Shown: piece by piece, positions 1-19,380 of the stretch
How positions within the stretch are numbered: position 1 is the first letter of the stretch
Layout: each line of letters opens with the position of its first letter
Assembly (NCBI GenBank): GCA_001179505.1
Contig: CDMY01000273.1
Span: 1-64,000, forward strand
Origin: Vitrella brassicaformis CCMP3155
Lineage: Eukaryota; Protista; Chromerida
Length of the DNA stretch: 64,000 bases
Reading direction: 5' to 3'
Notes under the pieces: model-generated
Told to the model about the DNA's origin: nothing
Database searches by the model: none
What the model saw: only the letters and a program-made list of their open reading frames with translations
Translations under genes and position numbers: made by a program

Positions 1-1683
1 GTCGGCCCCCGCCCGCAGCAGGGAATGGATGATCAGCTTGTACTTGTCACTCTCGGCTCGACACCGCTCCTTGATGTGCTCGGGTGTGTTGGGGTCCTGC
101 AGCCCTTGGGTGCAGCAATCGAGCTGTCTGGCAGCGATGGCAAGGGGCGTGTCGTTTGTGTAGCGCGTCCGTCTGTTGATCTCGGCAGCAGGCAGCTTGC
201 GGCAGAGGTAGCCGGCCACATAGACTGAGCCATAACTTGTGGCTTCGTGCAGTGGCGTCCATCCAGTGCGGTCGTCTGCCGTCATGTCGGCCCCGTTCGC
301 TGTAATGAGGTCCAGGTAGGCGTTGATGAAGGACTGGGGATAGTGCGCATTTGAGTGGATGGCTGCCTTGTGCACCAGGTTTTCGCCATTGTCGAATCGT
401 TGGGTTGCGAGTGTGGGGTCTCGTTCGATGAGTTGCCGATACATCGACAGCAGCTGCTGCAGATACTCGGGGGGAGGCTGACGATGCAGACGGGGCAGCT
501 TCCACAAGTACAGGTCGATGTGACGCACCATGAGGGTGTCGAAGGCCGTCTGGTTGCCGGATGCGATCGCCAAGCAAATGGGCAGCTCGAGGTCGCCTTG
601 GTCATTGGCTAGGTGGTTGGGGTCGACGCCTCCGTCGATGAGTGCGGTCAGGATGGCCGCCTGCAGCTCGTCAGACGACCACTGGGGCAGGGCCACGGGA
701 CGGGGGTCATAACCACCATCATCTACTTGGATGGTCGGGACGGCATGATCCGACTTGTTGTCAATGGCGAGAAGGACCAGCGACTATTGAATGCCAGCAC
801 ACCCGCTGCCCTTCTGCCGCAGCCGAGGCTCGACATTCGAGTTGGCGCCCTTCTTGATGAGGTCGGTCACCTGCTGCGGGGCCTAGATGGTGCGGCCGAT
901 GATGCCCAGTGTCAGCTCCTTGGTGAGGTCGTCGGTGTTGTGGAGGAATAGAGCCTCGGTGTTATGGGGTCCCAAACAGCCGTCAGGCACCTCGACCGTG
1001 GTGGCCACCACTATTGGATGGCCTGCAACACACACACAGCCACCACACGACACACACAGTGAAGGAATGTGTGTGCGGATCACATTCTTTCGCGTCTGTC
1101 TGTCTGTCTGTCTGGCGTACCGTCCTCCTCATAGCCGTCGTCTTCATCGCTCTCGTCGTCATCGAAGCCGTCGCCCAGCGGCCCTCCGTCGTCATCACTG
1201 TCGTCCTGCACACCATCCTGACACAACAAAGAGGAACAGGGAGGAAAACTGCTGACGCTCGTCGCATGGGGCGGTTGGTGCTGTCAATGAGCGACTCACC
1301 GATTCGGATTCGTTCTCAGCTGCCGCCTGTGGACCTTCCTCCTCCTCGGCCATCTCGCCGTCCTCCTCCTCACGCAACAAATCTGAAACGAAGACACACC
1401 AACACATTCGTCAGCATGACTGAACACAGACACACTGCTCGTGTGATGGTCGGTCTGTGTGGCGTGCTGTTGACTCACCACTGTCAGCGTCATTGTCTTC
1501 TTGCCCGTCTGGCTGCCCGCCGCCATTGTTATCCTCCTCAGCTACATCGTCTGCACACACCATCGAAGACCACACACACACAGACGTGTGGCGCTGATGC
1601 TGTGTGTTTGATGTGTCACATTCATCTGTGTGTGGCGTACCTGCGTCGCCATCGCCACCGTCCGCCATGGCAGCCGAGGCCAT
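1..1683 (-). pseudogene. Ankyrin-repeat protein of a lineage-expanded family; acidic N-terminus over 4 small exons; two in-frame TAG stops in the main exon; runs off the left edge
   Basis: Manual minus-strand translation: MASAAMADGGDGDA|DDVAEEDNN..|DLLREEEDGE..|DGVQDDSDDD..|GHPIVV..GIIGRTI*APQQVTDLIKKGA..GIQ*SLVLLAID..GENLVHKAA..NGADMTADDRTGWTPLHEATSYGSVYVAGYL..NDTPLAIAA. The ankyrin consensus (GxTPLHxA, TPLAIAA) is clear. TAG codons at 883-885 and 784-786 are in the same frame. GT-AG junctions are intact. Confidence 0.8.
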
Positions 1684-2940
1684 GTGGCTGTCGTGACCTC
1701 CAGACATCTCACTCAAACAGACACCAACAGCTGCACCGACCACACACAGAGAGGCGACAAGAGATGGGCAGTCAGTGAGTCCTTCCCTTCGTCATCTTCC
1801 CCTCCTCCTCTCCCTTCTTGAGTTGCTGTGTGCCGAACACGCACCGTGGTCAGAAGGATCAATCTCTGCCGTACAAGCCTTCACGGGTCCATCATGGGCA
1901 TGGCCGGCCCCAAGCAACACACGCACGAGAGCTGCCAACGCAATAGAGAGACGGGTCTTCAATCCAAGCGAGGACAAACCTTGCTGTCAGAACCCTACGC
2001 CCCGTCTGCGAGCTTTTCGAGGAGAAAAGAAGTCGATAAAGGACCCCGTTTGAAGAGATCTGAGACAGGCAACACACGAGCAGGCAATCCGGACCGACAA
2101 AAGCTGAAAGTGACGGCGAAAAACCGACACGACCGACCCTGGCCGCCAAACAACCCAGCCGTCTTGTTCGGTCGTTGGTTCCCGCGATGGCACAGCCTTA
2201 GCCCGAAGGTATCAATGCGCAGATGGCTCGACAACTACCATGGAAAAGCGAATGTTGTATGTCTTGCAGCCACGGCATCTGTGGCCACTGGCGAGTCCGC
2301 CACGACCTCTCAGCAGCAGCAGCAGCCGTCGGGTGCCCTCGCCATGGCAACAGCTGCTGCCGTCGGCGCCACGGGCAATGGCAATGCCAGCGGCGGATAC
2401 GGTAAGCCTGACATCAGCTGCCGGACAGATGGATGGATGGATGAATGTCCTCTCTTCCGCGTGTTGTCGCTGCGTGTCTGTTGGTATGGTGACCCATGCA
2501 GAGCAGCTGACGCATGCAGAGCGACGCTGCCTGCCTGCCTGCCCGACTGCCTTCTTTCTCTGGCTGGCTACGTCGTTCGTGTGTGTGGTTTGGGGTGTAG
2601 GTGTGGGTTTGTGCATGTGTGTGTGTGTGTGGACCGTTTCTCGACACTTTGGCATGGAGCGACTGGATGGATGAAATGCGAATTGATTGATGCGCAGCAA
2701 GTCACACGAGCGAACAGATACCACAACAGACAGACAGACATACATACACCCACCCTCCCTGTCTACCCAGTGCCACCACCCGCTGCCCCGCCTGTTTGAA
2801 CAAAGGCACCCAGGAACACGCAATAACTGCGTGCCTACAAATAGAGACTTAAACCAGCACCCCCTTGTCGCACCACATGTTCCCTCCCACCTGAAGCCAG
2901 CCCTCCTCCCTCCCTCTCTCTGTGGCCGACCAGCCGACCC

Positions 2941-4740
2941 CTATGCCGCCACCTTCTGGCGAACAAGCGCAGCTGTCTGAGGGTACCGCTCATCTGGGCG
3001 GCGCTTCCAAGCAACGGGGAGCTCCGTGGTGCAGATCCTCAGGCGCGCGTCAACGCGGACCAGGAAATCATCGGCCGCCTTGTCCCCACACAGAATGAAG
3101 ATCGTCCCATGCCACCGCATACTTGCGCCGTCGACCCACCAGTAGACCACTTTGCGGCAGCCCTTCCACTGTCCCCTTGCGTGCCGCATGACGTCTCGGG
3201 TGAGCTGGTACTCGGTGGGCCGTGGAGTGAGGAGTTGGCTTGGGTGCGTGTGGTGGGGGCGCAGCCGAAAGTGGATCCCGTCGGTCAGGTGCTTGTCGGT
3301 CAAGAAGACTATGATATCCGTGAACGAACAGTAAACGTACTTGCCACCTGCAGACAGACAGCAGACATGGAGGATTCACACATTTATCTCTCCGCCATCC
3401 CACGAGGGTTCTGTCGGCTGCTGCGCTCACATTTGGTCGGCGGGTCGGGATCAGTCAAATCGATGGTTACGTAGGTCAGGGGGTGGGTCAGCCATGAGGG
3501 TCCCACATGATCTTGGCCATTGGCGCGGACTAGACCCGCATACGCATCGAAGATACGGTAACTGAACAGCGAGTACTGGCGCACCGCCTCCGGCCGCGTG
3601 TCGAAGACCGCCCGGCTGCCCACCTGCCGCAGATCATCTGGCGTGATGATGATAGGCAGAGAGGGAAGTTCGCGGCAGTTCTTGAGGCAGTGGATGAGCG
3701 ACACACATCGGTCCCAGCGGCCGCCCTCCTCGATGACGTACAACACCCTCAACAGATAACTCACCCTAGTGTCTCGACGGATCAGCAGCAGCACGTCCAT
3801 TAGCCCACTCCAGATTAGAACGCACATTACGAACAACCAAACCGACGATAAGACGCGGAGCAGCCAACCATGATCGCAACGCCAAGCGGCGGGGTCAAAT
3901 CCCGCTCGAGTAGCCTCCCCTTGGCACACTCGAGGAGTATCCACACACCCAGACCGTGACCCAAGTCGTCAAACGCCAAACAGAACTGCCTATACGCTCG
4001 CACGACGAAGGACGCCTCCCCAAGCCATCGGATGGCCGCTTCAATCACAAAAAAGGGGACCGCCCAGGCAAGAAGGGAGAGAAGCCCCTGGATGGGCCAC
4101 TGAATCCACGGGAACACGGCCAGCGGCTGCAGCAGAAAGGATGCCGGGGGCCCTATCAGGTTGGCGGTATAGTAGAGGAGGAGCCCATAAACGAAGAAGT
4201 AAACGTTTGAGCCCACGACAACTTGAGCGATAGCAGAGACCACACTGAAGATGGCCGCCATCCACTGCAACAGAATAAGCAGGACCGTCTCGCACCGCTT
4301 CTGGTAGGTGAGCACTCCATCAAGGCCCTTCTCGCGAAGGGCCGCGTCGAGGCGGTGCGTCACATAGCCCTCACTGATGAGCTGGCAGCCGACACTCTTG
4401 GATGAGGCTCGAAGGGCGACGCAGTCGTGAGCTCTGAGGCAAGCCAAAGTTTGCCTCTCGACATCCTCAGGCAAGCCGACCAGATGACACGCACTAGTGC
4501 CCGACTGACGTACACACACCCACGCAGACCGACAGACGCGCACAAGGCAGACATTGAATGGCCGCCTCCGCTCATTATGTGTTGTTCCTCACTCACCGGC
4601 GGCGCCCCTTCTCGGCTCTTGTACGTCTCGCTGTCCACCGGTAAGTTCAGATCCTGCATAAACCACAGACCATTAACACGGACAGCGGTGTTCGTGTTGG
4701 TGTTCGTCGTGCTGCCGGGCACTGTGCTGCGCACCGGCAT
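2941..4740 (-). pseudogene. Copy A of a lineage-specific protein with an F-box-like N-terminal motif and a hydrophobic multi-TM insert; apparent 1-nt frameshift near 3870
   Basis: GLPEDVERQTLACLRAHDCVALRASSK fits the F-box pattern LPxD/E..L..L...D...LR..SK. Introns ~4596-4505 and 3430-3348. The reading frame jumps from ORF 3827-4543 (..LTPPLGVAIMVG) to ORF 3384-3944 (WLLRVLSS..YLLRVLYVIEEGGRWDRCV) where copy B is continuous. The last exon ends RQKVAA-TAG at 2941. The start codon is uncertain. Confidence 0.6.
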
Positions 4741-12300: not shown

Positions 12301-13943
12301 ATGTCGGGCAGCCGGGAGGCCGAGTGGCTGCGGTGGGGGGCGTGGGGGTTGGTCTGCACCGATGCGACATCCATGTCGTCGGAGGGCTTGCGGACCCTGA
12401 TCCATTGGCACACAAGAACGAGCCGATGACAAGTCGTGCATTCAGGCGTGTCTATGCGTTTTCTTTGTCTCGCTCACGTCGTGGTGGGTTCTGGTGGTTG
12501 TGGCTGCTCTGCTGGCGGGGGTCGCGATGATGAGTGTGGTGTGGATGAGGGTGCCTGGGAGTAGGGGGTGGTCGGGGGGTCCTCGGGGGTGCCCTTCGAC
12601 TCAGACACCGAGGGCGACGACACAAACGGCCTGACGTGCCCAAAACAAGGAAACACGCCAGTTCTTGTCAAGAACTGTTACAGCTTTATCTCTTCTGTCG
12701 TGTGGCTTACGCATCACTGGGGCGAGGCGCCTTGTTGGACCTACACAGACACACAGACACCCGAACAGAGAAATGCTCCTGCATGCTCCCTTCCTTGCCC
12801 ACCCCCCCTCATGGTTTATTCTCACTGTCTCTGCGCCCAGAACCGCATGTGTGACGCCCTCGTGTTGAAGAGCGCCTGCTGGTCGCGCAGCAGCGCCTCC
12901 ACACTCTCATAGACACCCAGGATGGGCCCAGGCAATGGCGGCGACATGCTCTCCAGCCGCCTCGCCAGCCCCCGCCCCTCCTGCCGATACCGCACATGAG
13001 GGTCGCCCTTGGTCTCGTCGCTGGCCCTTGCGAACGCCCTCGCGTCAAAAATGTTGATGAGGCTGACACGGATGCTGCCGCCGTACCCCTGCATGGCCTG
13101 CGCGCAGACGAGCCAAAAATCGCCGCGCTGCCCGACCATCCAGACGCCGCTGCTGCCGTCCGCCACAGGGATGGGCTTGCCCAGCCGCCGCTCGAGCTCG
13201 GCAAAGACCTTCCTGCGTGTGGCGTTGTCATTGGTCGAGGGCCGGCTCTTGATCAGGATCTCGCCCCGCCGCGTGCACTTGAGGGACTGGCAGTCCTTCC
13301 GGGTGGAGATGGTGTGTGTGACGGCGGTGCTGAAGAGCTTGTCGGGCCTGCACTCGGCGACGGGCAGCTGCTGCTGGTGGTGGGCGTCGGCCGTGTGTCG
13401 GTTTTTCTTGCGGCCTTTGCCCTTCTTCCTGGTGTGCACCAGCGGCCAGAGGACGGGCCCGATCTTGGTGCGGAGGAGCTCCGTCTGCACGGCGGTGGTG
13501 ACGTCGTCTTCATCGGCGCCCCCCTCCTCGAGCTGCTGCAGGGGGATGGGGTTGGCCTTCAGATCTTCCTCCGTGATGCGGATGGGCGGCTCAATCCTCC
13601 CGGTGCAACTCAACAGCCGAAGCAGTGGCTCCCTGCAGACAGACAGACAGACAGACAACCACACCCAACGACACACACAGAATGAGCCGAATCCACGATG
13701 ACCATGCATAGCCGTGCCGTGCTGTGGTGTGCAGTCAGTGGTCGTGTGTGCGTACCATTTGTCCCATGCCTTCTTGCTGCGAAGGACGAGAGGGAGGTGC
13801 GCCGGCGCCATTCGCGCGAGCAGCAGATCCGGCGCCACGAGACAGACCTCAGAGATGCATGGCTCGTGACTGCGCGCTGAACTCGATGAGGCGCAGGTCT
13901 CGCCACAGCTCATGTAACCGGACGAGGCACCGAACAGCGCCAT
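9334..13943 (-). CDS. Large multi-exon hypothetical protein: globular N-terminal region, helical middle, long acidic/Pro/His-rich disordered C-terminus
   Basis: ORFs 12822-13943, 12000-12413 and 9334-12060 can be joined through GT-AG introns with SSR-rich interiors (around 13750-13635, 12825-12730, 12480-12400, 12135-12065, 11900-11812). There is no recognisable catalytic motif. It could be two genes. Confidence 0.6.
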
Positions 13944-14081
13944 CTGGTTCAGCGATGCTGCGGGACGAAATCCCGAGACTGCGGCGGTTCCCTACCGCAT
14001 TGGGAGGACAAGGTGAAGCGCGTGAAGCCCAAATGAGATTGGGGAAAGGTCTGCGAGCTTGGCTGCTGTCTGCGAGCTTGA

Positions 14082-14247
14082 AGTTGGAGTATCAGCAGTA
14101 GCTCGGGGTAGCGAGTAGGAATGTGACGAAGCCGAAAGAAGCATTCAGTGACGACGGAAGTCTCATGGACACGCAAGCTTGGGTCCACAACCATCGCAAT
14201 TCATGTCTCGTAGATCTCGCCCGTGTAACCCGGTCTCCGCTCTAACT
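14082..14247 (-). repeat. 3' LTR (166 bp)
   Basis: On the minus strand it begins AGTTAGAG and ends CTCCAACT (8-bp terminal inverted repeat, 7/8 match). It is a near-identical direct repeat of 18101-18266. Confidence 0.85.
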
Positions 14248-14256
14248 CCCCCTCTC
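14248..14256 (-). other. Polypurine tract immediately upstream of the 3' LTR
   Basis: Minus strand reads GAGAGGGGG directly before AGTTAGAG, which is the typical Ty1/copia PPT position and composition. Confidence 0.75.
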
Positions 14257-15192
14257 GCTCGTCAGCTTTTGCTTGTCGTTGCTGCCGAGCGCTCATCATG
14301 AGGTGTTGGCGGTCAGCGAGATCGTCGAGAAAGAAACAGACGAGGTGCTTTTTCGGCTGTTTATCAGCTCACAGCAGCTCGTCAAGCCATGCGGATGACG
14401 CTTGGAGAGATGGGAGGCATCTTGTGCTCTTGCTACCACCTCCGCATCACCACGCGGCTTGGTACGGCACTCACATGCAGATCATGAACATGCAAGTGTG
14501 CCTTTCATTGTTCTGGCTGGCTGTCTGCCCCATCTATCTGCCTTTCCTGCCTGTCTGTCCTTTTCTAGGTCCAGACTCGGCTGCGGCAGAAGACACACAC
14601 ACACGTAAGCATGTGTCAATGTGAATTGTGTTTGTTTCTTTTGTTGGCTTCAGGGCTTGTGACAAAGCGCCACGCAAGCATCCTGAAGACCATGGTGCTG
14701 ATGTGTCTGCAGCCTGAGCTGACCATTCTTGGGTCGCTCTGCTGTCACAGACATCAGCTACTTACCTGACGGTCGATAGCGCCTTTATTTCTATTGCTTA
14801 CCTTTTCTCGGCGCCTTTTGTGTGTGCCTTTTTCGCTCTTTTTTCTTGTCTATACGGTCAGTGATGGTGGGTTTGCTTGCCTGTGTTGGCTTATATTGTC
14901 TCCCCCTCTTGACCGTATAGGTGAGCGAGGCATTAGAAGCACATGACGTGGCAAACATGCATGCCAGCTTGCTGAGTCAGATAGAACAGCCCTGCATGAG
15001 AACTGCTCTGTGTCAGTTTCTCGAATCACAAGAGAGACTGCAGGCCATGCGGATATTCACGGCCACGTGAGGGTGTACAGTCCTCACGAGTCGTGATGTC
15101 CGTGCACACGTGGCTGCTCTCAATCTTCCCATCTTCTAGATAGGTGGCTCTCGCCTCACACAGTACCTCTATGAGTGTCTGTGGCGATTCTG

Positions 15193-16887
15193 AGGTCTAT
15201 CTCAGTCGTCCCTCGCTTTTGCCATTGCGTCGCTCTGTGCCTTGTGTGTCTATGAACACACAGTGGCATTGGCATGCAATGGGTAAGTCAGACACATTTG
15301 TTTTTGTAAGACATCTGTGATGTCTTTCTGGTGTGTGGCTCGACCTAGCTGTCTGTCTTTGTGCAGCGAGCGAACACACACATGTGTCTAGACGAGCTGA
15401 GACCGCATCAGGCCAGCTGCGCTATTTGTGCGCTGTGCTGTTATTGCTTTGCCTAATGCCCCCTCTGAGCTCAATGCCCAAGGAGTGAGCCAGCAATTGA
15501 GAGTCAGGCTAGGTTTTCAATGAACCCACTTAGGACGCAGAGCGTCATCAATGCATTTTGTGTATGCATGCGACACTCCACCGTGCGCTGGTCCGTGACT
15601 CAATGCTGTACATTTTTGATTTTGCGTGAGGGACATCTGGACTTTGAAATAGAGGTGACGAATCACTTGGTGCAGCCATGGCACATACTCTTCTGACTGC
15701 ATCTGAGCAATCACATCACTCTCTAAGTCCTTTCCCTCTCGCACGTACTGTCAATGTGTTCCTTGATCAAAAGTATGACTGCACGCAGACCAATTCCTCA
15801 TGGAATCGATCAACAGCAGATCACTTCTCTCTCAGTCAGTTCTTTCTCAGCCCTCATCAATCAATGCACATCTGTCATCCATCGATCAANNNNNNNNNNN
15901 NNNNNNNNNNNNNNNNNNNNNNNNNNNNNNNNNNNNNNNNNNNNNNNNNNNNNNNNNNNNNNNNNNNNNNNNNNNNNNNNNNNNNNNNNNNNNNNNNNNN
16001 NNNNNNNNNNNNNNNNNNNNNNNNNNNNNNNNNNNNNNNNNNNNNNNNNNNNNNNNNNNNNNNNNNNNNNNNNNNNNNNNNNNNNNNNNNNNNNNNNNNN
16101 NNNNNNNNNNNNNNNNNNNNNNNNNNNNNNNNNNNNNNNNNNNNNNNNNNNNNNNNNNNNNNNNNNNNNNNNNNNNNNNNNNNNNNNNNAGGTCTATCTC
16201 AGTCGTCCCTCGCTTTTGCCATTGCGTCGCTCTGTGCCTTGTGTGTCTATGAACACACAGTGGCATTGGCATGCAATGGGTAAGTCAGACACATTTGTTT
16301 TTGTAAGACATCTGTGATGTCTTTCTGGTGTGTGGCTCGACCTAGCTGTCTGTCTTTGTGCAGCGAGCGAACACACACATGTGTCTAGACGAGCTGAGAC
16401 CGCATCAGGCCAGCTGCGCTATTTGTGCGCTGTGCTGTTATTGCTTTGCCTAATGCCCCCTCTGAGCTCAATGCCCAAGGAGTTAGCCAGCAATTGAGAG
16501 TCAGGCTAGGTTTTCAATGAACCCACTTAGGATGCAGAGCGTCATCAATGCATTTTGTGTATGCATGCGACACTCCACCGTGCGCTGGTCCGTGACTCAA
16601 TGCTGTACATGTTTGATTTTGCGTGAGGGACATCTGGACTTTGAAATAGAGGTGACGAATAACTTGGTGCTGCCATGGCACATGCTGTTCTGACTGCATC
16701 TGAGCAATCACATCACTCTCTTAAGTCCTTTCCCTCTCGCACGCACTGTCAATGTGTTCCTTGATCAAAAATATGACTGCACGCAGACCAATTCCTCATG
16801 GAATCGATCAGCAGCAAATCACTTCTCTCTCAGTCAGTTCTTTCTCAGCCCTCATCAATCAATGCACATCTGTCATCCATCGATCAA
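15193..16887. repeat. ~697-bp direct duplication (15193-15889 and 16190-16887; period ~997 bp) flanking a scaffold gap
   Basis: Both copies start aggtctatctcagtcg and end catccatcgatcaa. There are about a dozen substitutions/indels by eye, all in the second half. Confidence 0.9.
15890..16189. other. Assembly gap (300 N)
   Basis: Run of N. Confidence 1.
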
Positions 16888-17086
16888 CCAGCCGGCAGAC
16901 CAATCGACCAACAGACGGCAAGATAGCACTGAGTGAGTGACGAGACGATAGAGAGAAAAATACTTCTGTACATATACAGACGTACATGACGTCCATATGT
17001 ATACGTACACACAGCTTCACTTGCACTAGCCCCCTGTCTTCGTGAGCTCTTGGGTGCCAGCTAGTGCGCTGTTGTCTTGTAGAGCC

Positions 17087-18022
17087 TCATTCGTCTGGCT
17101 CAGATCCATCGTCACTGTCTCGCACCTCTTGCAGCATATGGCCGAGCACTCGACATTCATCTGTCGTGTGATTGAACAGCGAACGTTCTCGTCGCGTAGA
17201 GCAGAGACGACAGAATAGTTGCCGGCGCTCTTGGGCGGCACCAGCAACGGGCAATAATACCACAGTCGATGCTCCCTGTCCTGTATTGCGTCCAGACAGG
17301 GTGTGCGGGTCAGATGGACCATGCGTACCGTCACCGAGCTCCGCAATAATGCGAGCGGCCATACGGCGCATCTTTTCGTGAGTGAAGTCCACCTGCCCGA
17401 TGAACACACTCCACAGAAAAGCACACATTGGTTCGCTCTGAGCACCCAGACGCACGATCATCTTCTGTACGACGTCGTCTTTTGTGCGCCTTTCTGTACC
17501 ATACGCCTTGTTGACGGCAAGTGAGAGACGATCAAGGTCTCCAAGATTATCCATGAAGCCCTTGCTCTTGTCATAATCCCACCTGTCGTATTCGACATTT
17601 GTCTGTGTGCGCCTCTGCTCGATGCTCGGCTCATATCTGCGACGCAGAGCCAACAGAGACACATACTCATCGTGTGTGGTGGTTGCCTCCTGGACCGTTC
17701 CTTGATAGTCCTTGCCCTCTGTGGCCCTATCCAGTGCTCTCCACAACATCCATCTTCCCATCCTCATGTTGCGGCGTTGGACATCTGTGAGCGACTCGTC
17801 AGCGAGCAGCACCGACAGCTCGTCATCGGTTGACGGATGGAAGTACTTGGCCATGCCATCGATGCCATAGAACATGCCAGCAAACGACTGATGCCAGCTG
17901 TGGTAGTCGCTCTCTTTGCCGCTGAAGCGAGGAGGGTTGGCGGCGATGCCATCAGCCATCTTGTACCACAACTCACTGTGTGTCACTTGTTGGATGACGT
18001 CACGTTGTTTGGTCATCATCAC
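17087..18022 (-). CDS. Retrotransposon Gag-like protein (311 aa) with a C-terminal CX2CX10HX4C zinc knuckle
   Basis: The intronless ORF starts ~65 nt after the PBS. N-terminal PPRFSGKESDYHSW resembles the copia Gag F.G.NY..W start. LLALRRRYEP and DDVVQKMIVRL resemble the UBN2/Retrotran_gag_2 helical core. The C-terminus has CRLCSTRRERSLFNHTTDEC. Confidence 0.75.
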   Translation of the reverse strand: MMMTKQRDVIQQVTHSELWYKMADGIAANPPRFSGKESDYHSWHQSFAGMFYGIDGMAKYFHPSTDDELSVLLADESLTDVQRRNMRMGRWMLWRALDRATEGKDYQGTVQEATTTHDEYVSLLALRRRYEPSIEQRRTQTNVEYDRWDYDKSKGFMDNLGDLDRLSLAVNKAYGTERRTKDDVVQKMIVRLGAQSEPMCAFLWSVFIGQVDFTHEKMRRMAARIIAELGDGTHGPSDPHTLSGRNTGQGASTVVLLPVAGAAQERRQLFCRLCSTRRERSLFNHTTDECRVLGHMLQEVRDSDDGSEPDE

Positions 18023-18086
18023 CGGGAGATGGTGTCTCGCCAGATGGTGAGGGAGTGCACGCCAGATGGCTCATCATACCCGAGGT

Positions 18087-18100
18087 GGGCGTTCATAACC
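18087..18100 (-). other. Primer-binding site complementary to the anticodon arm of initiator tRNA-Met (Hemivirus/copia type), with a 2-nt insertion
   Basis: Minus strand reads GGTTATGAACGCCC directly after the LTR end. Drosophila copia uses GGTTATGGGCCC. The complement of the iMet anticodon arm GGGCUCAUAACC is GGTTATGAGCCC. Confidence 0.7.
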
Positions 18101-18266
18101 AGTTGGAGTATCAGCAGTAGCTCGGGGTAGCGAGTAGGAATGTGACGAAGCCGGTAGAAGCATTCAGTGACGACGGGGGTCTCACGGACACGCAAGCTTG
18201 GGTCCACATCCATCGCAATTCATGTCTCGTAGATCTCGCCCGTGTAACTCGGTCTCCGCTCTAACT
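18101..18266 (-). repeat. 5' LTR (166 bp)
   Basis: Same length and the same AGTT...AACT termini as 14082-14247. Confidence 0.85.
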
Positions 18267-18335
18267 CCCGCTACCATCACGTTTTCCACAGCTCGCACAT
18301 GAAGAGAGCGCCTCCACTCTCCGCTCTAGAAAGGA

Positions 18336-19380
18336 ATGCATGAGGAGGACATCGCTTGCATGGATCGTGAAGAAGACGACTCTTCGCCGTTCGACCCATG
18401 GCAGATAGACGTTCCGTCTGCGGATGGGGTGGCGACCAGCAATATAGAGGTCGCGGAAGGCAGCCTGCAGACAGCAATGACTTCCCTCACTTGCGCTCTG
18501 TTGATGTTTTGCGTGCAGGAAATCAAAGACTGTATGTTTCAAGACGGTCAGTGGTACTTCCTGGTGTCGTACGCGTTTCTGGATGACTCATACAACACAT
18601 GGTAAGCATCACCGTACCAGGGACATCACGAAGGGCCCGCAGTGCGTTTGTGTTTTAACAGTGCCGGTCATTGGTCGCCCTGTTGTGGGTGCGCGCGTGT
18701 GTGTCTGTAGGGAGCCTGAGGCATCTCTGCAACAGTCGCTGCCCGAGTCGCTGCAGACAGTGTGTGAGCAGCTGAAGCAGAACGCCCAGTACGCCATCGA
18801 TGACATCAGAGAAGTCCAGTAAGCAGACACGGTCACTCACGGCACACCCGTCCGTCCCACACCCGTGAGGATGCTGCGCCTGCCTTCCTTGTGCTGTCGC
18901 ATCTGTGTGTGCACTGCAGGTACAACAAGCCTGACTCCAAGTACTACTTTCTGATCAAGTGGTTGGGGTTCGACGAGAACGAGTAAGCCGCATCGCATCG
19001 CCAGGCAGGCAGGCAGCTATGTGACGCCATTCACACAAGTAAGAGTGGTGTCCTCTCCTCTGTCTGCATCAGAAACACATGGGAGCCGGAGGAGAACATT
19101 CTGGATACCGACTTGTGCTCGAGTTTGAAGCTCAAGTCGCTCGGGCCATGGTGAGACGGGCACCACCACAACCACACCTATCAATCGCATATGATGCTGA
19201 TGGATGGATGGCATGTCTGTGTGTACGTCCCTGGTTCGTGCTGTTTGTTTCAGGTTCACTGCGTTGGTGCCTCAGATTGAGAGCGAGCCTGTGCAGCCGT
19301 TGCCGCCCAAACCTTCCCCCTCTGCTGGAGATGATGCCGCGTCGCCGCCCGACCTCGATACGGACTCAGAGCCCTTTTGA
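18336..19380 (+). CDS. Small tandem-chromodomain protein (~185 aa, 6 exons)
   Basis: Exons 18336-18449, 18519-18601, 18711-18818, 18920-18982, 19073-19135 and 19254-19380 join in frame (558 nt). CD1 is NIEEIKDCMFQDGQWYFLVSYAFLDDSYNTWEPEASL. CD2 is YAIDDIREVQYNKPDSKYYFLIKWLGFDENENTWEPEENI. Confidence 0.85.

What the first reader, a model, noticed from the sequence alone, without database searches (positions are those of the whole stretch)
14082..18266. LTR retroelement whose LTRs end in AGTT...AACT instead of TG...CA
Seen: both 166-bp repeats begin AGTTAGAG and end CTCCAACT on the minus strand, a self-complementary terminal pair present at all four ends, and are bounded exactly by a PBS and a PPT. 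Established: almost all LTRs are TG...CA because integrase acts on the CA end; AGT-starting LTRs are known mainly from Drosophila gypsy-group elements. Inference: copia-type priming signals combined with AG...CT ends, in a chromerid, may mark an undescribed LTR lineage with altered integrase end recognition. Caveat: no TSD is visible (flanks ttga and cccg).
Basis: partly seen in the sequence, partly recalled or inferred. Interest (0 to 1): 0.8.

Follow-up and report, generated by a model that had tools for sequence, protein, structure and literature searches.

The report
Promoter-targeting retrotransposon with unusual ends
This is a small copia-type jumping gene of the alga Vitrella whose repeats end in AG...CT instead of the near-universal TG...CA, and whose copies sit exactly 22 letters from a gene-start signal, so it appears to aim at promoters with single-letter precision.

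Summary
The two 166-bp repeats (14082-14247 and 18101-18266, element on the minus strand) are real LTRs of a family with at least 40 hits in this genome (Vitrella brassicaformis).

- **Ends:** about twenty copies share exactly the ends AGTTAGAG...CTCCAACT. A primer site follows the 5' LTR directly and a purine tract precedes the 3' LTR directly. Five other insertions have perfect 5-bp target duplications, so AG...CT are true integration ends.
- **Identity:** the unit is a 3,193-bp, gag-only, non-autonomous Ty1/copia-type element. Its gag has a capsid-like fold, and a relative carries gag-protease-integrase. [quoted passage not shown]
- **The window's copy is a composite:** a 697-bp duplication flanks the 300-N gap. 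Its LTRs differ at 7 sites (0-2 in intact copies), and it has no target duplication.
- **New here:** insertions lie exactly 22 nt from the promoter word AGCTCGCA. Of 20 genome-wide LTR-end/motif pairs, 12 are at N22, where about 0.3 is expected. One is on a contig with a likely autonomous partner.

RT phylogeny and the partner's sequence could not be obtained. The scan had noted the ends (s1-201944) and the motif (s1-212014) separately on other DNA.

The parts
18101..18266 (-). 5' LTR, 166 bp, AGTTAGAG...CTCCAACT
   Evidence: Direct repeat. Boundaries shared by about 20 genomic copies. The junction with the host flank is covered by a single-copy-depth contig.
18084..18100 (-). Primer binding site GGTTATGA-AC-GCCCACC. 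It is complementary to positions 26-32 and 33-40 of the initiator tRNA, with a 2-nt bulge.
   Evidence: Conserved after every 5' LTR. The initiator tRNA gene was found at G000:C378:53638-53679.
17087..18022 (-). gag ORF, 311 aa (first ATG at 18019), with a C-terminal CX2CX10HX4C knuckle. It is open in this copy and frameshifted in the C737 and C1001 copies.
   Evidence: 46% identical to the gag part of a gag-protease ORF on C1018. Residues about 135-231 match capsid C-terminal domains, including Drosophila Copia capsid.
16190..16887 (-). Second copy of the 697-bp stretch duplicated around the gap (non-coding inner region)
15890..16189 (.). Assembly gap (300 N)
   Evidence: No contig bridges it.
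15193..15889 (-). First copy of the duplicated 697-bp stretch
14264..15192 (-). Rest of the non-coding inner region, with patchy DNA similarity to the pol region of the C1018 relative (remnants of a deleted pol)
14248..14263 (-). Polypurine tract GACGAGCGAGAGGGGG abutting the 3' LTR
   Evidence: Conserved before every 3' LTR
14082..14247 (-). 3' LTR, 166 bp
   Evidence: Junction contig.
14052..14059 (-). Host promoter word AGCTCGCA, exactly 22 nt beyond the 3' LTR end. A second copy lies at 14071-14078. It faces a 373-codon open frame at 12822-13943.
18290..18297 (+). Host promoter word AGCTCGCA, 23 nt beyond the 5' LTR start. It faces an open frame that starts at 18336.

Best explanation
The finding is a copy of a 3,193-bp non-autonomous, gag-only LTR retrotransposon of the Ty1/copia kind in Vitrella brassicaformis.

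How it most likely works:
1. Its RNA is packaged by its own capsid-like Gag. It is copied by protease, integrase and reverse transcriptase supplied in trans by a related autonomous element.
2. Minus-strand synthesis starts from a 5' fragment of the initiator methionine tRNA that ends at C40. The fragment pairs through its anticodon stem-loop with the site directly after the 5' LTR ('half-tRNA' priming, as in copia and Ty5).
3. Plus-strand synthesis starts from the purine tract directly before the 3' LTR.
4. Because both primers abut the LTRs, the finished DNA should be blunt with the ends AGTT...AACT. It is joined to the host as such, with a 5-bp staggered cut.
5. The integrase therefore accepts a ...CT-3' end instead of ...CA-3'.
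6. Integration is not random. The young subfamily inserts so that the LTR end lies exactly 22 nt (5-bp duplication plus 17 nt) on the upstream side of the promoter word AGCTCGCA, in either orientation but mostly co-oriented with the gene. The most likely cause is that the integration complex is held by whatever protein sits on that word.

The copy in this window is not one clean insertion. Its two halves come from two different insertions next to two divergent gene starts. They were joined either by recombination or tandem collapse, or by the scaffolder across the gap.

Shown: the ends, duplications, spacing, tRNA complementarity, gag fold and composite nature. Inferred: trans-mobilisation, blunt-end integration and tethering.
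For: **Ends and boundaries**
- 43 LTR hits in the genome.
- About 20 copies have identical boundaries, all 5' LTRs followed by the same primer site and all 3' LTRs preceded by the same purine tract.
- Perfect 5-bp duplications abut AGTT and AACT: ATCTC (C737), GAGGA (C1001), GCACT (C343 solo), CTTAG (C170), GTAGG (C615/C630).

**Unit length and age**
- C737 and C1001 are both 3,193 bp.
- Their LTR pairs differ by 0 and 2 sites, against 7 in the window copy and 4-9 between unrelated copies.

**Copia kind**
- The gag is 46% identical to the N-terminal part of a 610-aa ORF on C1018 that continues into a Pol_BBD protease region. That ORF is followed by gag_pre-integrs plus rve.
- The C1018 element has a 152-bp LTR with the same AGTTAGAG...CTCCAACT ends and a sister primer site.
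- Its integrase's best matches among 1.8 billion representatives are Ty1-copia / TNT 1-94 polyproteins, at 31-36% identity.
- The confident part of the gag model matches capsid C-terminal domains, including Copia capsid 8vvw (Z 8.3).

**tRNA**
- The only genomic hit to an initiator-type pattern is on C378. It has anticodon stem GTGGG/CCCAC, loop CTCATAA split by a 9-nt intron, and T-loop ATCGAAA.
- The C89 family's site GGTTATGAGCCCAC is a perfect 14-nt complement of positions 27-40.
- The window family and C1018 pair over 15 nt with a 2-nt bulge.

**Targeting**
- Eight held flanks have the motif at offset exactly 22, and two more at 23, one of them a 7-of-8 match.
- Genome-wide, CTCYAACT-N{10,40}-AGCTCGCA gives 20 hits against 1 for the reversed control. 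Twelve are at N22 and one at N23. The other seven are spread over N12-N35, about 0.25 per spacing.
- The motif occurs only 7 times in this 64-kb window, and 3 of those are beside the element.
- The 17 nt between the duplication and the motif differ at every site.
- ATG-led open frames follow the motifs, pointing away from the element.

**Partner**
- C511 has a gag C-terminus 86% identical to this gag and an RVT_2 domain in a 731-aa open frame.
- It also has CTCCAACT + N22 + AGCTCGCA at 4359-4396.

**Expression**
- Transcriptome contigs carry both gag families.
Against: - No autonomous copy with this family's own LTR was seen. C511 gave no rve hit and no LTR hit, and its DNA could not be read, so the partner is inferred.
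- No RT was placed on a tree.
- The primer site of the window family has a 2-nt bulge against the tRNA, so priming efficiency is unknown.
- The tRNA has C1:G72 rather than the usual eukaryotic initiator A1:U72, and ARAGORN does not call it.
- Older or divergent copies (LTR identity under 93%) show no motif nearby, so targeting is a property of the young subfamily or is not universal.
- Three to four young copies known from one side only lack the motif on that side.
- That AGCTCGCA marks transcript starts rests on earlier scan notes and on open frames seen here, not on start-site data of my own.
- The contigs that confirm the two junctions may come from the same reads as the assembly.
Confidence: 0.8

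Rival explanations
1. The boundaries are misplaced by a base or two and the true LTRs are ordinary TG...CA repeats. On this reading AGTT/AACT is part of the flank or of the inner region.
For: In this window the repeat can be extended to 172 nt with mismatches. This copy also has no target duplication to fix the ends.
Against: In five independent insertions a perfect 5-bp duplication abuts AGTT on one side and AACT on the other. Flanks diverge completely beyond those letters in about 20 copies. No TG/CA pair lies within 2 nt of either end.
Confidence: 0.02
2. The 22-nt spacing to AGCTCGCA is not integration targeting. The motif and spacer either belong to a host repeat into which the element fell once and was then copied, or were carried along with the element, or only insertions at that place survive selection.
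For: Some sites are duplicated in the assembly: C646 twice with identical flanks, and C615/C630. Insertions elsewhere in a gene-dense genome may be purged.
Against: The 17 nt between duplication and motif, and everything beyond, are unrelated between the 10-11 distinct sites. The target duplication sits between LTR and spacer, so the spacer is host DNA. Selection cannot set a spacing to the exact base. The motif is a general promoter word found all over the genome without the element (earlier notes s1-212014, s1-248694).
Confidence: 0.06
3. The element is a relative of the Drosophila errantiviruses (gypsy group), the one group known for AGT...AnT ends, rather than a copia-type element.
For: The terminal trinucleotides AGT...ACT are the same as in errantiviruses, which are also site-specific integrators (PMC5408687).
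Against: - The relative on C1018 has integrase directly after protease, with the copia-specific gag_pre-integrs domain.
- The nearest integrases are Ty1-copia polyproteins.
- The putative partner has RVT_2, the copia-type RT family.
- Duplications are 5 bp.
- The primer is half an initiator tRNA.
- No env is present.
Confidence: 0.02
4. The window's copy is one genuine insertion. On this reading it carries a real internal 0.7-kb tandem duplication, its target duplication has mutated away and its LTRs have aged.
For: Both host junctions are supported by contigs at single-copy depth. The two flanking genes face away from the element as at a normal two-way promoter.
Against: None of the 5 duplication positions match. 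The LTRs differ at 7 sites, as much as unrelated copies, while the gag is the only intact one. The two copies of the duplicated stretch are identical for about 300 nt and then differ at 12 sites, as expected of contig ends built from different copies. A motif at the canonical distance on both sides fits two separate targeted insertions.
Confidence: 0.1

Closest known systems
Ty1/copia elements primed by half an initiator tRNA (Drosophila copia, yeast Ty5)
   Same: - Gene order gag-protease-integrase in the relative.
- 5-bp duplications and short LTRs.
- The primer site pairs with the anticodon stem-loop of tRNA-iMet instead of its 3' end (PMC5371799).
- Capsid fold like Copia capsid.
   Different: - The ends are AG...CT, not TG...CA. 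Drosophila Copia-group elements have TG/CA (PMC5408687).
- The window family's primer site carries a 2-nt bulge.
- The integrase is only 31-36% identical to any known one.
- Copia and Ty5 do not insert at a fixed distance from a promoter word. Ty5 goes to silent chromatin (my knowledge).
TR-GAG non-autonomous LTR retrotransposons of plants (PMC4350172)
   Same: Under 4 kb, two LTRs, primer site and purine tract, and a single ORF for Gag. They depend on a partner for pol functions.
   Different: TR-GAG was described in angiosperms, whereas this one is in a chromerid alga. It has non-canonical ends and a defined target.
Drosophila errantiviruses (gypsy, ZAM, Idefix groups)
   Same: AGT...AnT terminal trinucleotides with several complementary end bases. 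They integrate site-specifically, and authors link the odd ends to that specificity (PMC5408687).
   Different: They belong to a different superfamily (Ty3/gypsy, RT before integrase, env gene), have 4-bp duplications (my knowledge) and use whole-tRNA priming. The resemblance is convergent.
Non-TGCA Copia elements of plants (Tos17, AtRE1, TARE1; LTR_retriever survey)
   Same: They are mostly Copia, have very short LTRs and small elements, and insert near or in genes (bioRxiv 10.1101/137141).
   Different: All seven plant types keep the first T ('only the first nucleotide is invariable'), whereas here the first letter is A and the last is T. The plant elements show a regional preference, not a spacing exact to the base.
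Ty3 of yeast and DGLT-A of Dictyostelium (position-specific integration next to Pol III genes)
   Same: Integration falls within a window of a base or two, set by a protein complex bound at a start site, and either orientation is possible (PMC8632968, PMC6101501).
   Different: Those are Ty3/gypsy elements aimed at tRNA genes through TFIIIB/TFIIIC. Here a copia-type element is aimed at a word found at protein-coding gene starts. The tether is unknown.

Membership tests
LTR retrotransposon | Two direct long terminal repeats with short terminal inverted repeats | tested here: met
   166-bp repeats. AGTTAGAG versus the complement of the end, AGTTGGAG, match at 7 of 8.
LTR retrotransposon | Primer binding site after the 5' LTR and polypurine tract before the 3' LTR | tested here: met
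   Both are conserved in all copies. The primer site is complementary to the genome's initiator tRNA.
LTR retrotransposon | Target site duplication of fixed length | tested here: met
   5 bp in five other insertions. It is absent in the window's composite copy.
LTR retrotransposon | TG...CA terminal dinucleotides | tested here: not met
   AG...CT in all copies of three families. The feature is typical of the class rather than strictly defining, since exceptions are known.
Ty1/copia (Pseudoviridae) | Gene order gag-protease-integrase-RT | tested here: inconclusive
   gag-protease-integrase is seen on the C1018 relative, whose contig ends before any RT. C511 has gag and then RVT_2 2.4 kb later, but no rve hit, and its DNA could not be read.
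Ty1/copia (Pseudoviridae) | Integrase and RT homologous to copia-type ones (gag_pre-integrs, rve, RVT_2) | tested here: met
   gag_pre-integrs plus rve on C1018. The best matches are named Ty1-copia / TNT 1-94. RVT_2 on C511.
Ty1/copia (Pseudoviridae) | RT groups with copia RTs in a phylogeny | not tested
Ty1/copia (Pseudoviridae) | 5-bp target duplication | tested here: met
TR-GAG (gag-only non-autonomous LTR element) | Under 4 kb, LTRs plus primer site plus purine tract, a single gag ORF, no pol | tested here: met
   3,193 bp. The only ORF with homologues is gag. pol is reduced to short DNA remnants.
Errantivirus (gypsy group) | Ty3/gypsy pol order and env | tested here: not met
   Integrase follows protease. 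The domains are copia-type and there is no env.
Position-specific integrators (Ty3-like behaviour) | Insertions at a fixed distance from a defined host signal | tested here: met
   12 of 20 LTR-end/motif pairs are at N22, with about 0.3 expected per spacing and a control of 1 in all. Flanks.
Position-specific integrators (Ty3-like behaviour) | Physical tether between integrase and a host factor at the signal | not testable with these tools
   Neither the partner's full integrase nor the motif-binding protein is known.

The most novel reading that the evidence does not exclude
A copia-type lineage in a chromerid alga has changed both halves of the integration reaction together. Its integrase joins ...CT-3' ends instead of ...CA-3'. 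It is also held by the factor bound to the core-promoter word AGCTCGCA, so the element lands exactly 22 bp upstream of protein-coding gene starts. That would be a Pol II counterpart of Ty3's single-base precision at Pol III genes. It would have arisen independently, and it is shared by autonomous, gag-only and perhaps miniature elements of the same genome.
Probability: 0.5. Interest if true: 0.85.

Novelty: new variant of a known kind. Interest (0 to 1): 0.7.

Why it matters
- **Integrase chemistry.** The CA-3' end is treated as near-obligatory for retroviral-type integrases. A survey of 50 plant genomes found that even non-canonical LTRs always keep the first T. A copia-type family with A...T outermost letters, recently active (identical LTRs on C737), gives a natural system for asking which integrase residues read the end.
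- **Target choice.** Integration exact to the base next to a word that marks protein-coding gene starts has, to my knowledge, only Pol III-directed parallels (Ty3, DGLT-A). If a tether exists, it would identify the protein that reads an otherwise uncharacterised promoter element of chromerids, the closest free-living relatives of apicomplexan parasites.
- **Annotation.** LTR finders set to TGCA will miss these families. That may be part of why only 1.5 Mb of transposable elements was reported for this genome.

Tried and rejected
**Initiator tRNA**
- The canonical GGGCTCATAACCC has no exact match.
- Near-matches and 40 Rfam-tRNA loci held no initiator. A T-loop-anchored pattern without an intron also failed.
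- It was found only after allowing an intron. ARAGORN does not call it.

**Own-genome DNA**
- I did not try to get the same contigs through another tool.
- Because of this, C511, C425 and C646 were not inspected and no RT tree was made.

**Protein searches**
- Pfam finds nothing in the gag.
- Word searches find no gag relatives outside Vitrella.
- The AlphaFold model of gag is poor overall (pLDDT 51). Only its confident part (residues 135-231) was used, and Z 8 is modest for a helical domain.

**Transcript contigs**
- L131 starts at LTR position 15 of the C1018 family.
- L132 starts in the flank of a truncated solo LTR on C592.
- Assembled contigs cannot fix the U3/R/U5 borders, so I make no claim about them.

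**Reads**
- All runs are Logan contigs, broken at repeat borders. None bridges the gap or the whole element.

**Other**
- Rfam finds nothing in 13500-18800.
- Literature searches for the motif as a string and for 'AG...CT' notations gave nothing relevant.
- The C1018 copy (motif 125 nt away) and the C89 copy (no motif nearby) do not show the N22 spacing on their 5' side.


Full report
**Source.** The genome has 72,700,666 bases in 1,064 contigs. That matches the published Vitrella brassicaformis assembly of 1,064 scaffolds and 72.7 Mb (PMC4501334). Proteins on contigs of 6,097 and 6,701 bases, the lengths of C1018 and C1001, are named Vitrella brassicaformis CCMP3155 by NCBI.

**Observation.** The two repeats lie at 14082-14247 and 18101-18266.
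- On the minus strand each reads AGTTAGAG...CTCCAACT.
- The 5' LTR (18101-18266) is followed directly by GGTTATGAACGCCCACC.
- The 3' LTR is preceded directly by GACGAGCGAGAGGGGG.

**Gap.** The 697 nt before the gap (15193-15889) recur after it (16190-16887).
- The two copies are identical over the first 300 nt or so. They then differ at 11 substitutions and one indel.
- Gap-free copies on C737 and C1001 are both exactly 3,193 bp. The window copy aligns to them as 1-2077 and, after the gap, from 1383 to the end.
- So the real unit is 3.19 kb, and the extra kilobase is duplication plus N.
- No ORF crosses the gap.
- Public contigs do not bridge it.

**Are the ends real?** The LTR has 43 matches in the genome.
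- Placing about 30 of them in register shows that conservation stops exactly at AGTT on one side and AACT on the other.
- Every 5' LTR runs into the same primer site, and every 3' LTR is preceded by the same purine tract.
- Five other insertions have perfect 5-bp duplications that abut those letters: ATCTC (C737), GAGGA (C1001), GCACT (solo LTR, C343), CTTAG (C170) and GTAGG (C615/C630).
- Because the primer site and purine tract touch the LTRs with no spacer, the finished DNA should already end AGTT...AACT and need no trimming. This last point is inference.

**What kind of element?**
- The only ORF with relatives is 17087-18022 on the minus strand (311 aa). Pfam is silent on it.
- Within the genome it matches other copies. 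At 46% identity it also matches the first half of a 610-aa ORF on C1018.
- That ORF continues into a Pol_BBD protease region and is followed by gag_pre-integrs plus rve. This is the copia order.
- The C1018 element has a 152-bp LTR with the same AGTTAGAG...CTCCAACT ends and the sister primer site GGTTATATGAGCCCACC.
- Its integrase piece, scored against 1.8 billion representatives, finds 16,715 relatives. The best reach only 31-36% identity and are named Ty1-copia or TNT 1-94 polyproteins of plants, a green alga and a pseudoscorpion.
- The gag model is poor overall. Its confident part (residues 135-231) matches capsid C-terminal domains in about 25 of the top 30 rows. These include Drosophila Copia capsid (8vvw, Z 8.3, 90 residues, rmsd 3.4) and a Ty1 Gag CA-CTD.
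- The gag ends in a CX2CX10HX4C knuckle that is conserved between the two families.
- The inner 1.9 kb has only short DNA remnants of the C1018 pol region.
- The element is thus a gag-only deletion derivative, the type called TR-GAG in plants (PMC4350172).
- Only the window copy keeps the gag frame open. C737 and C1001 have frameshifts.
- Transcriptome contigs carry both gag families.

**Primer.**
- The usual initiator anticodon arm has no exact match in the genome.
- Allowing an intron gave one hit, on C378. Its features are acceptor CGCAGCA/TGCTGCG, anticodon stem GTGGG/CCCAC, loop CTCATAA interrupted after position 37 by TGCAGGGAC, and the initiator-type T-loop ATCGAAA.
- A third family (C89) has GGTTATGAGCCCAC straight after an LTR ending ...GCAACT. 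This is a perfect 14-nt complement of tRNA positions 27-40.
- The window family pairs with positions 26-32 and 33-40 around a 2-nt bulge. C1018 does the same with the bulge elsewhere.
- Pairing stops at C40, so the primer would be a 5' fragment of the tRNA. This is the 'half-tRNA' mode known from copia and Ty5 (PMC5371799).
- An earlier scan note on miniature LTR elements of this genome reached the same reading (s1-212038). I tested it independently by finding the tRNA.

**The window's copy is a composite.**
- LTR pairs differ at 0 sites (C737) and 2 sites (C1001). The window's pair differs at 7, the level seen between unrelated copies (4-9).
- With no duplication and the non-identical overlap at the gap, this means the 5' half and the 3' half stem from different insertions.
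- Each junction with host DNA is backed by a contig at single-copy depth. These may be the assembly's own reads.
- Three histories fit: two insertions in one intergenic region followed by recombination; two tandem elements collapsed by the assembler; or a false scaffold join. I cannot tell which.

**Unexpected result: a fixed target.**
- Reading outward from the LTR ends, AGCTCGCA starts exactly 22 nt away in eight held flanks (C737, C1001, C343, C782, C1012, C170, C581 and the window's 3' side). It starts 23 nt away at the window's 5' side, and at 23 nt as a 7-of-8 match on C687.
- Every young insertion known from both sides has it on one side.
- The word is not common. It occurs 7 times in this 64-kb window (3.4 expected), and 3 of those are beside the element.
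- A genome-wide pattern, LTR end or start, then 10-40 free letters, then the word, gave 20 hits against 1 for the reversed control.
  - Twelve are at N22. New among them are C425, C511 and C646 (twice, with the same flank).
  - One is at N23.
  - Seven are spread over N12-N35, about 0.25 per spacing.
- Nine of the twelve N22 hits are 3' ends, so most elements point the same way as the downstream gene.
- The 17 letters between duplication and word differ at every site. The spacer is therefore host DNA, and the spacing cannot be inherited or carried along.
- In four sites a second copy of the word lies 3-6 nt from the LTR.
- Older copies (under 93% LTR identity) lack the word nearby.
- The scan's earlier notes, 25 of them, independently call AGCTCGCA a promoter or start-site word of this genome. 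One followed-up note places it where mRNAs begin (s1-212014). None links it to LTR elements.
- In this window both element-side words are followed by ATG-led open frames that point away from the element.
- I read this as integration anchored by a protein on that word. It resembles Ty3 and DGLT-A at Pol III genes (PMC8632968, PMC6101501), but at protein-coding promoters and in a copia-type element.

**Partner.**
- C511 starts with a gag C-terminus 86% identical to this gag.
- It has RVT_2 at 2578-3246 inside a 731-aa open frame.
- It shows CTCCAACT, 22 letters and the word at 4359-4396.
- That is the layout expected of an autonomous relative with the same ends and target.
- However, it gave no rve hit and no hit to this LTR, and I could not read it.

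**Comparison with what is known.**
- AGT...AnT ends are documented for Drosophila errantiviruses, whereas Drosophila Copia and BEL groups have TG/CA (PMC5408687).
- In 50 plant genomes, seven non-TGCA types were found. They are mostly short-LTR Copia elements near genes, and all keep the first T (bioRxiv 10.1101/137141).
- I found no report of a copia-type element with AG...CT ends, nor of chromerid LTR families in any detail. The searchable library is limited and Repbase was not available.

**Verdict.** The finding is a new variant of a known kind, made more interesting by the 22-nt rule.

Noticed in passing
G000:C378:53638-53679 (L128, about 1490-1575, minus strand): The nuclear initiator tRNA gene carries a 9-nt intron after position 37 and has C1:G72. 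ARAGORN misses it. Several other nuclear tRNAs (Met elongator on C322, Tyr, Ile) also have introns.
   Followed up: partly
G000 contigs C991, C1054, C166, C847 (L084-L087): These carry Ile(GAT)-Ala(TGC) tRNA pairs with encoded CCA and a bacterial-type initiator tRNA, as in bacterial rRNA operon spacers. They are probably bacterial contigs in the algal assembly. C467 carries many tRNAs and looks like the plastid genome.
   Followed up: no
window:13900-18450 laid on runs X13-X19: Marine sediment metagenomes from two studies hold 20-33% of the element's words. Run X13, the one laid, has contigs 95-99% alike over the element but none over its flanks. So the family, or a close relative of the alga, occurs in the environment.
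   Followed up: partly
G000:C307:84634-84647 (L072): A perfect complement of the initiator tRNA anticodon arm is preceded by ...CTCAACA (a CA end). It is followed by a T-arm-like GGTTCGAACCCCGG. There is no tRNA call, and its nature is unknown.
   Followed up: no
Flanks on C170, C273 (14071-14078), C737, C646: At four target sites the promoter word occurs twice in tandem, 16-19 nt apart. The insertion lies just upstream of the nearer copy and 22 nt from the farther one.
   Followed up: no
L130 (Logan contig of run SRR646408) against C1018: One contig of the C1018 family lacks 68 nt inside the integrase region that the genome copy and another contig have. It could be a deletion variant or a spliced form.
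   Followed up: no
G000:C581:1-272 (L008) and C1012:4058-4266 (L006): LTR fragments lie head-to-head or partly duplicated, with short CCAACT repeats between them. These are nested or rearranged insertions at contig ends.
   Followed up: no
G000:C592:106570-106683 (L025) and transcript L132: A 5'-truncated solo LTR is read through from host sequence in a transcriptome contig. The contig then continues into gag of another copy, so it is probably an assembly chimera.
   Followed up: partly
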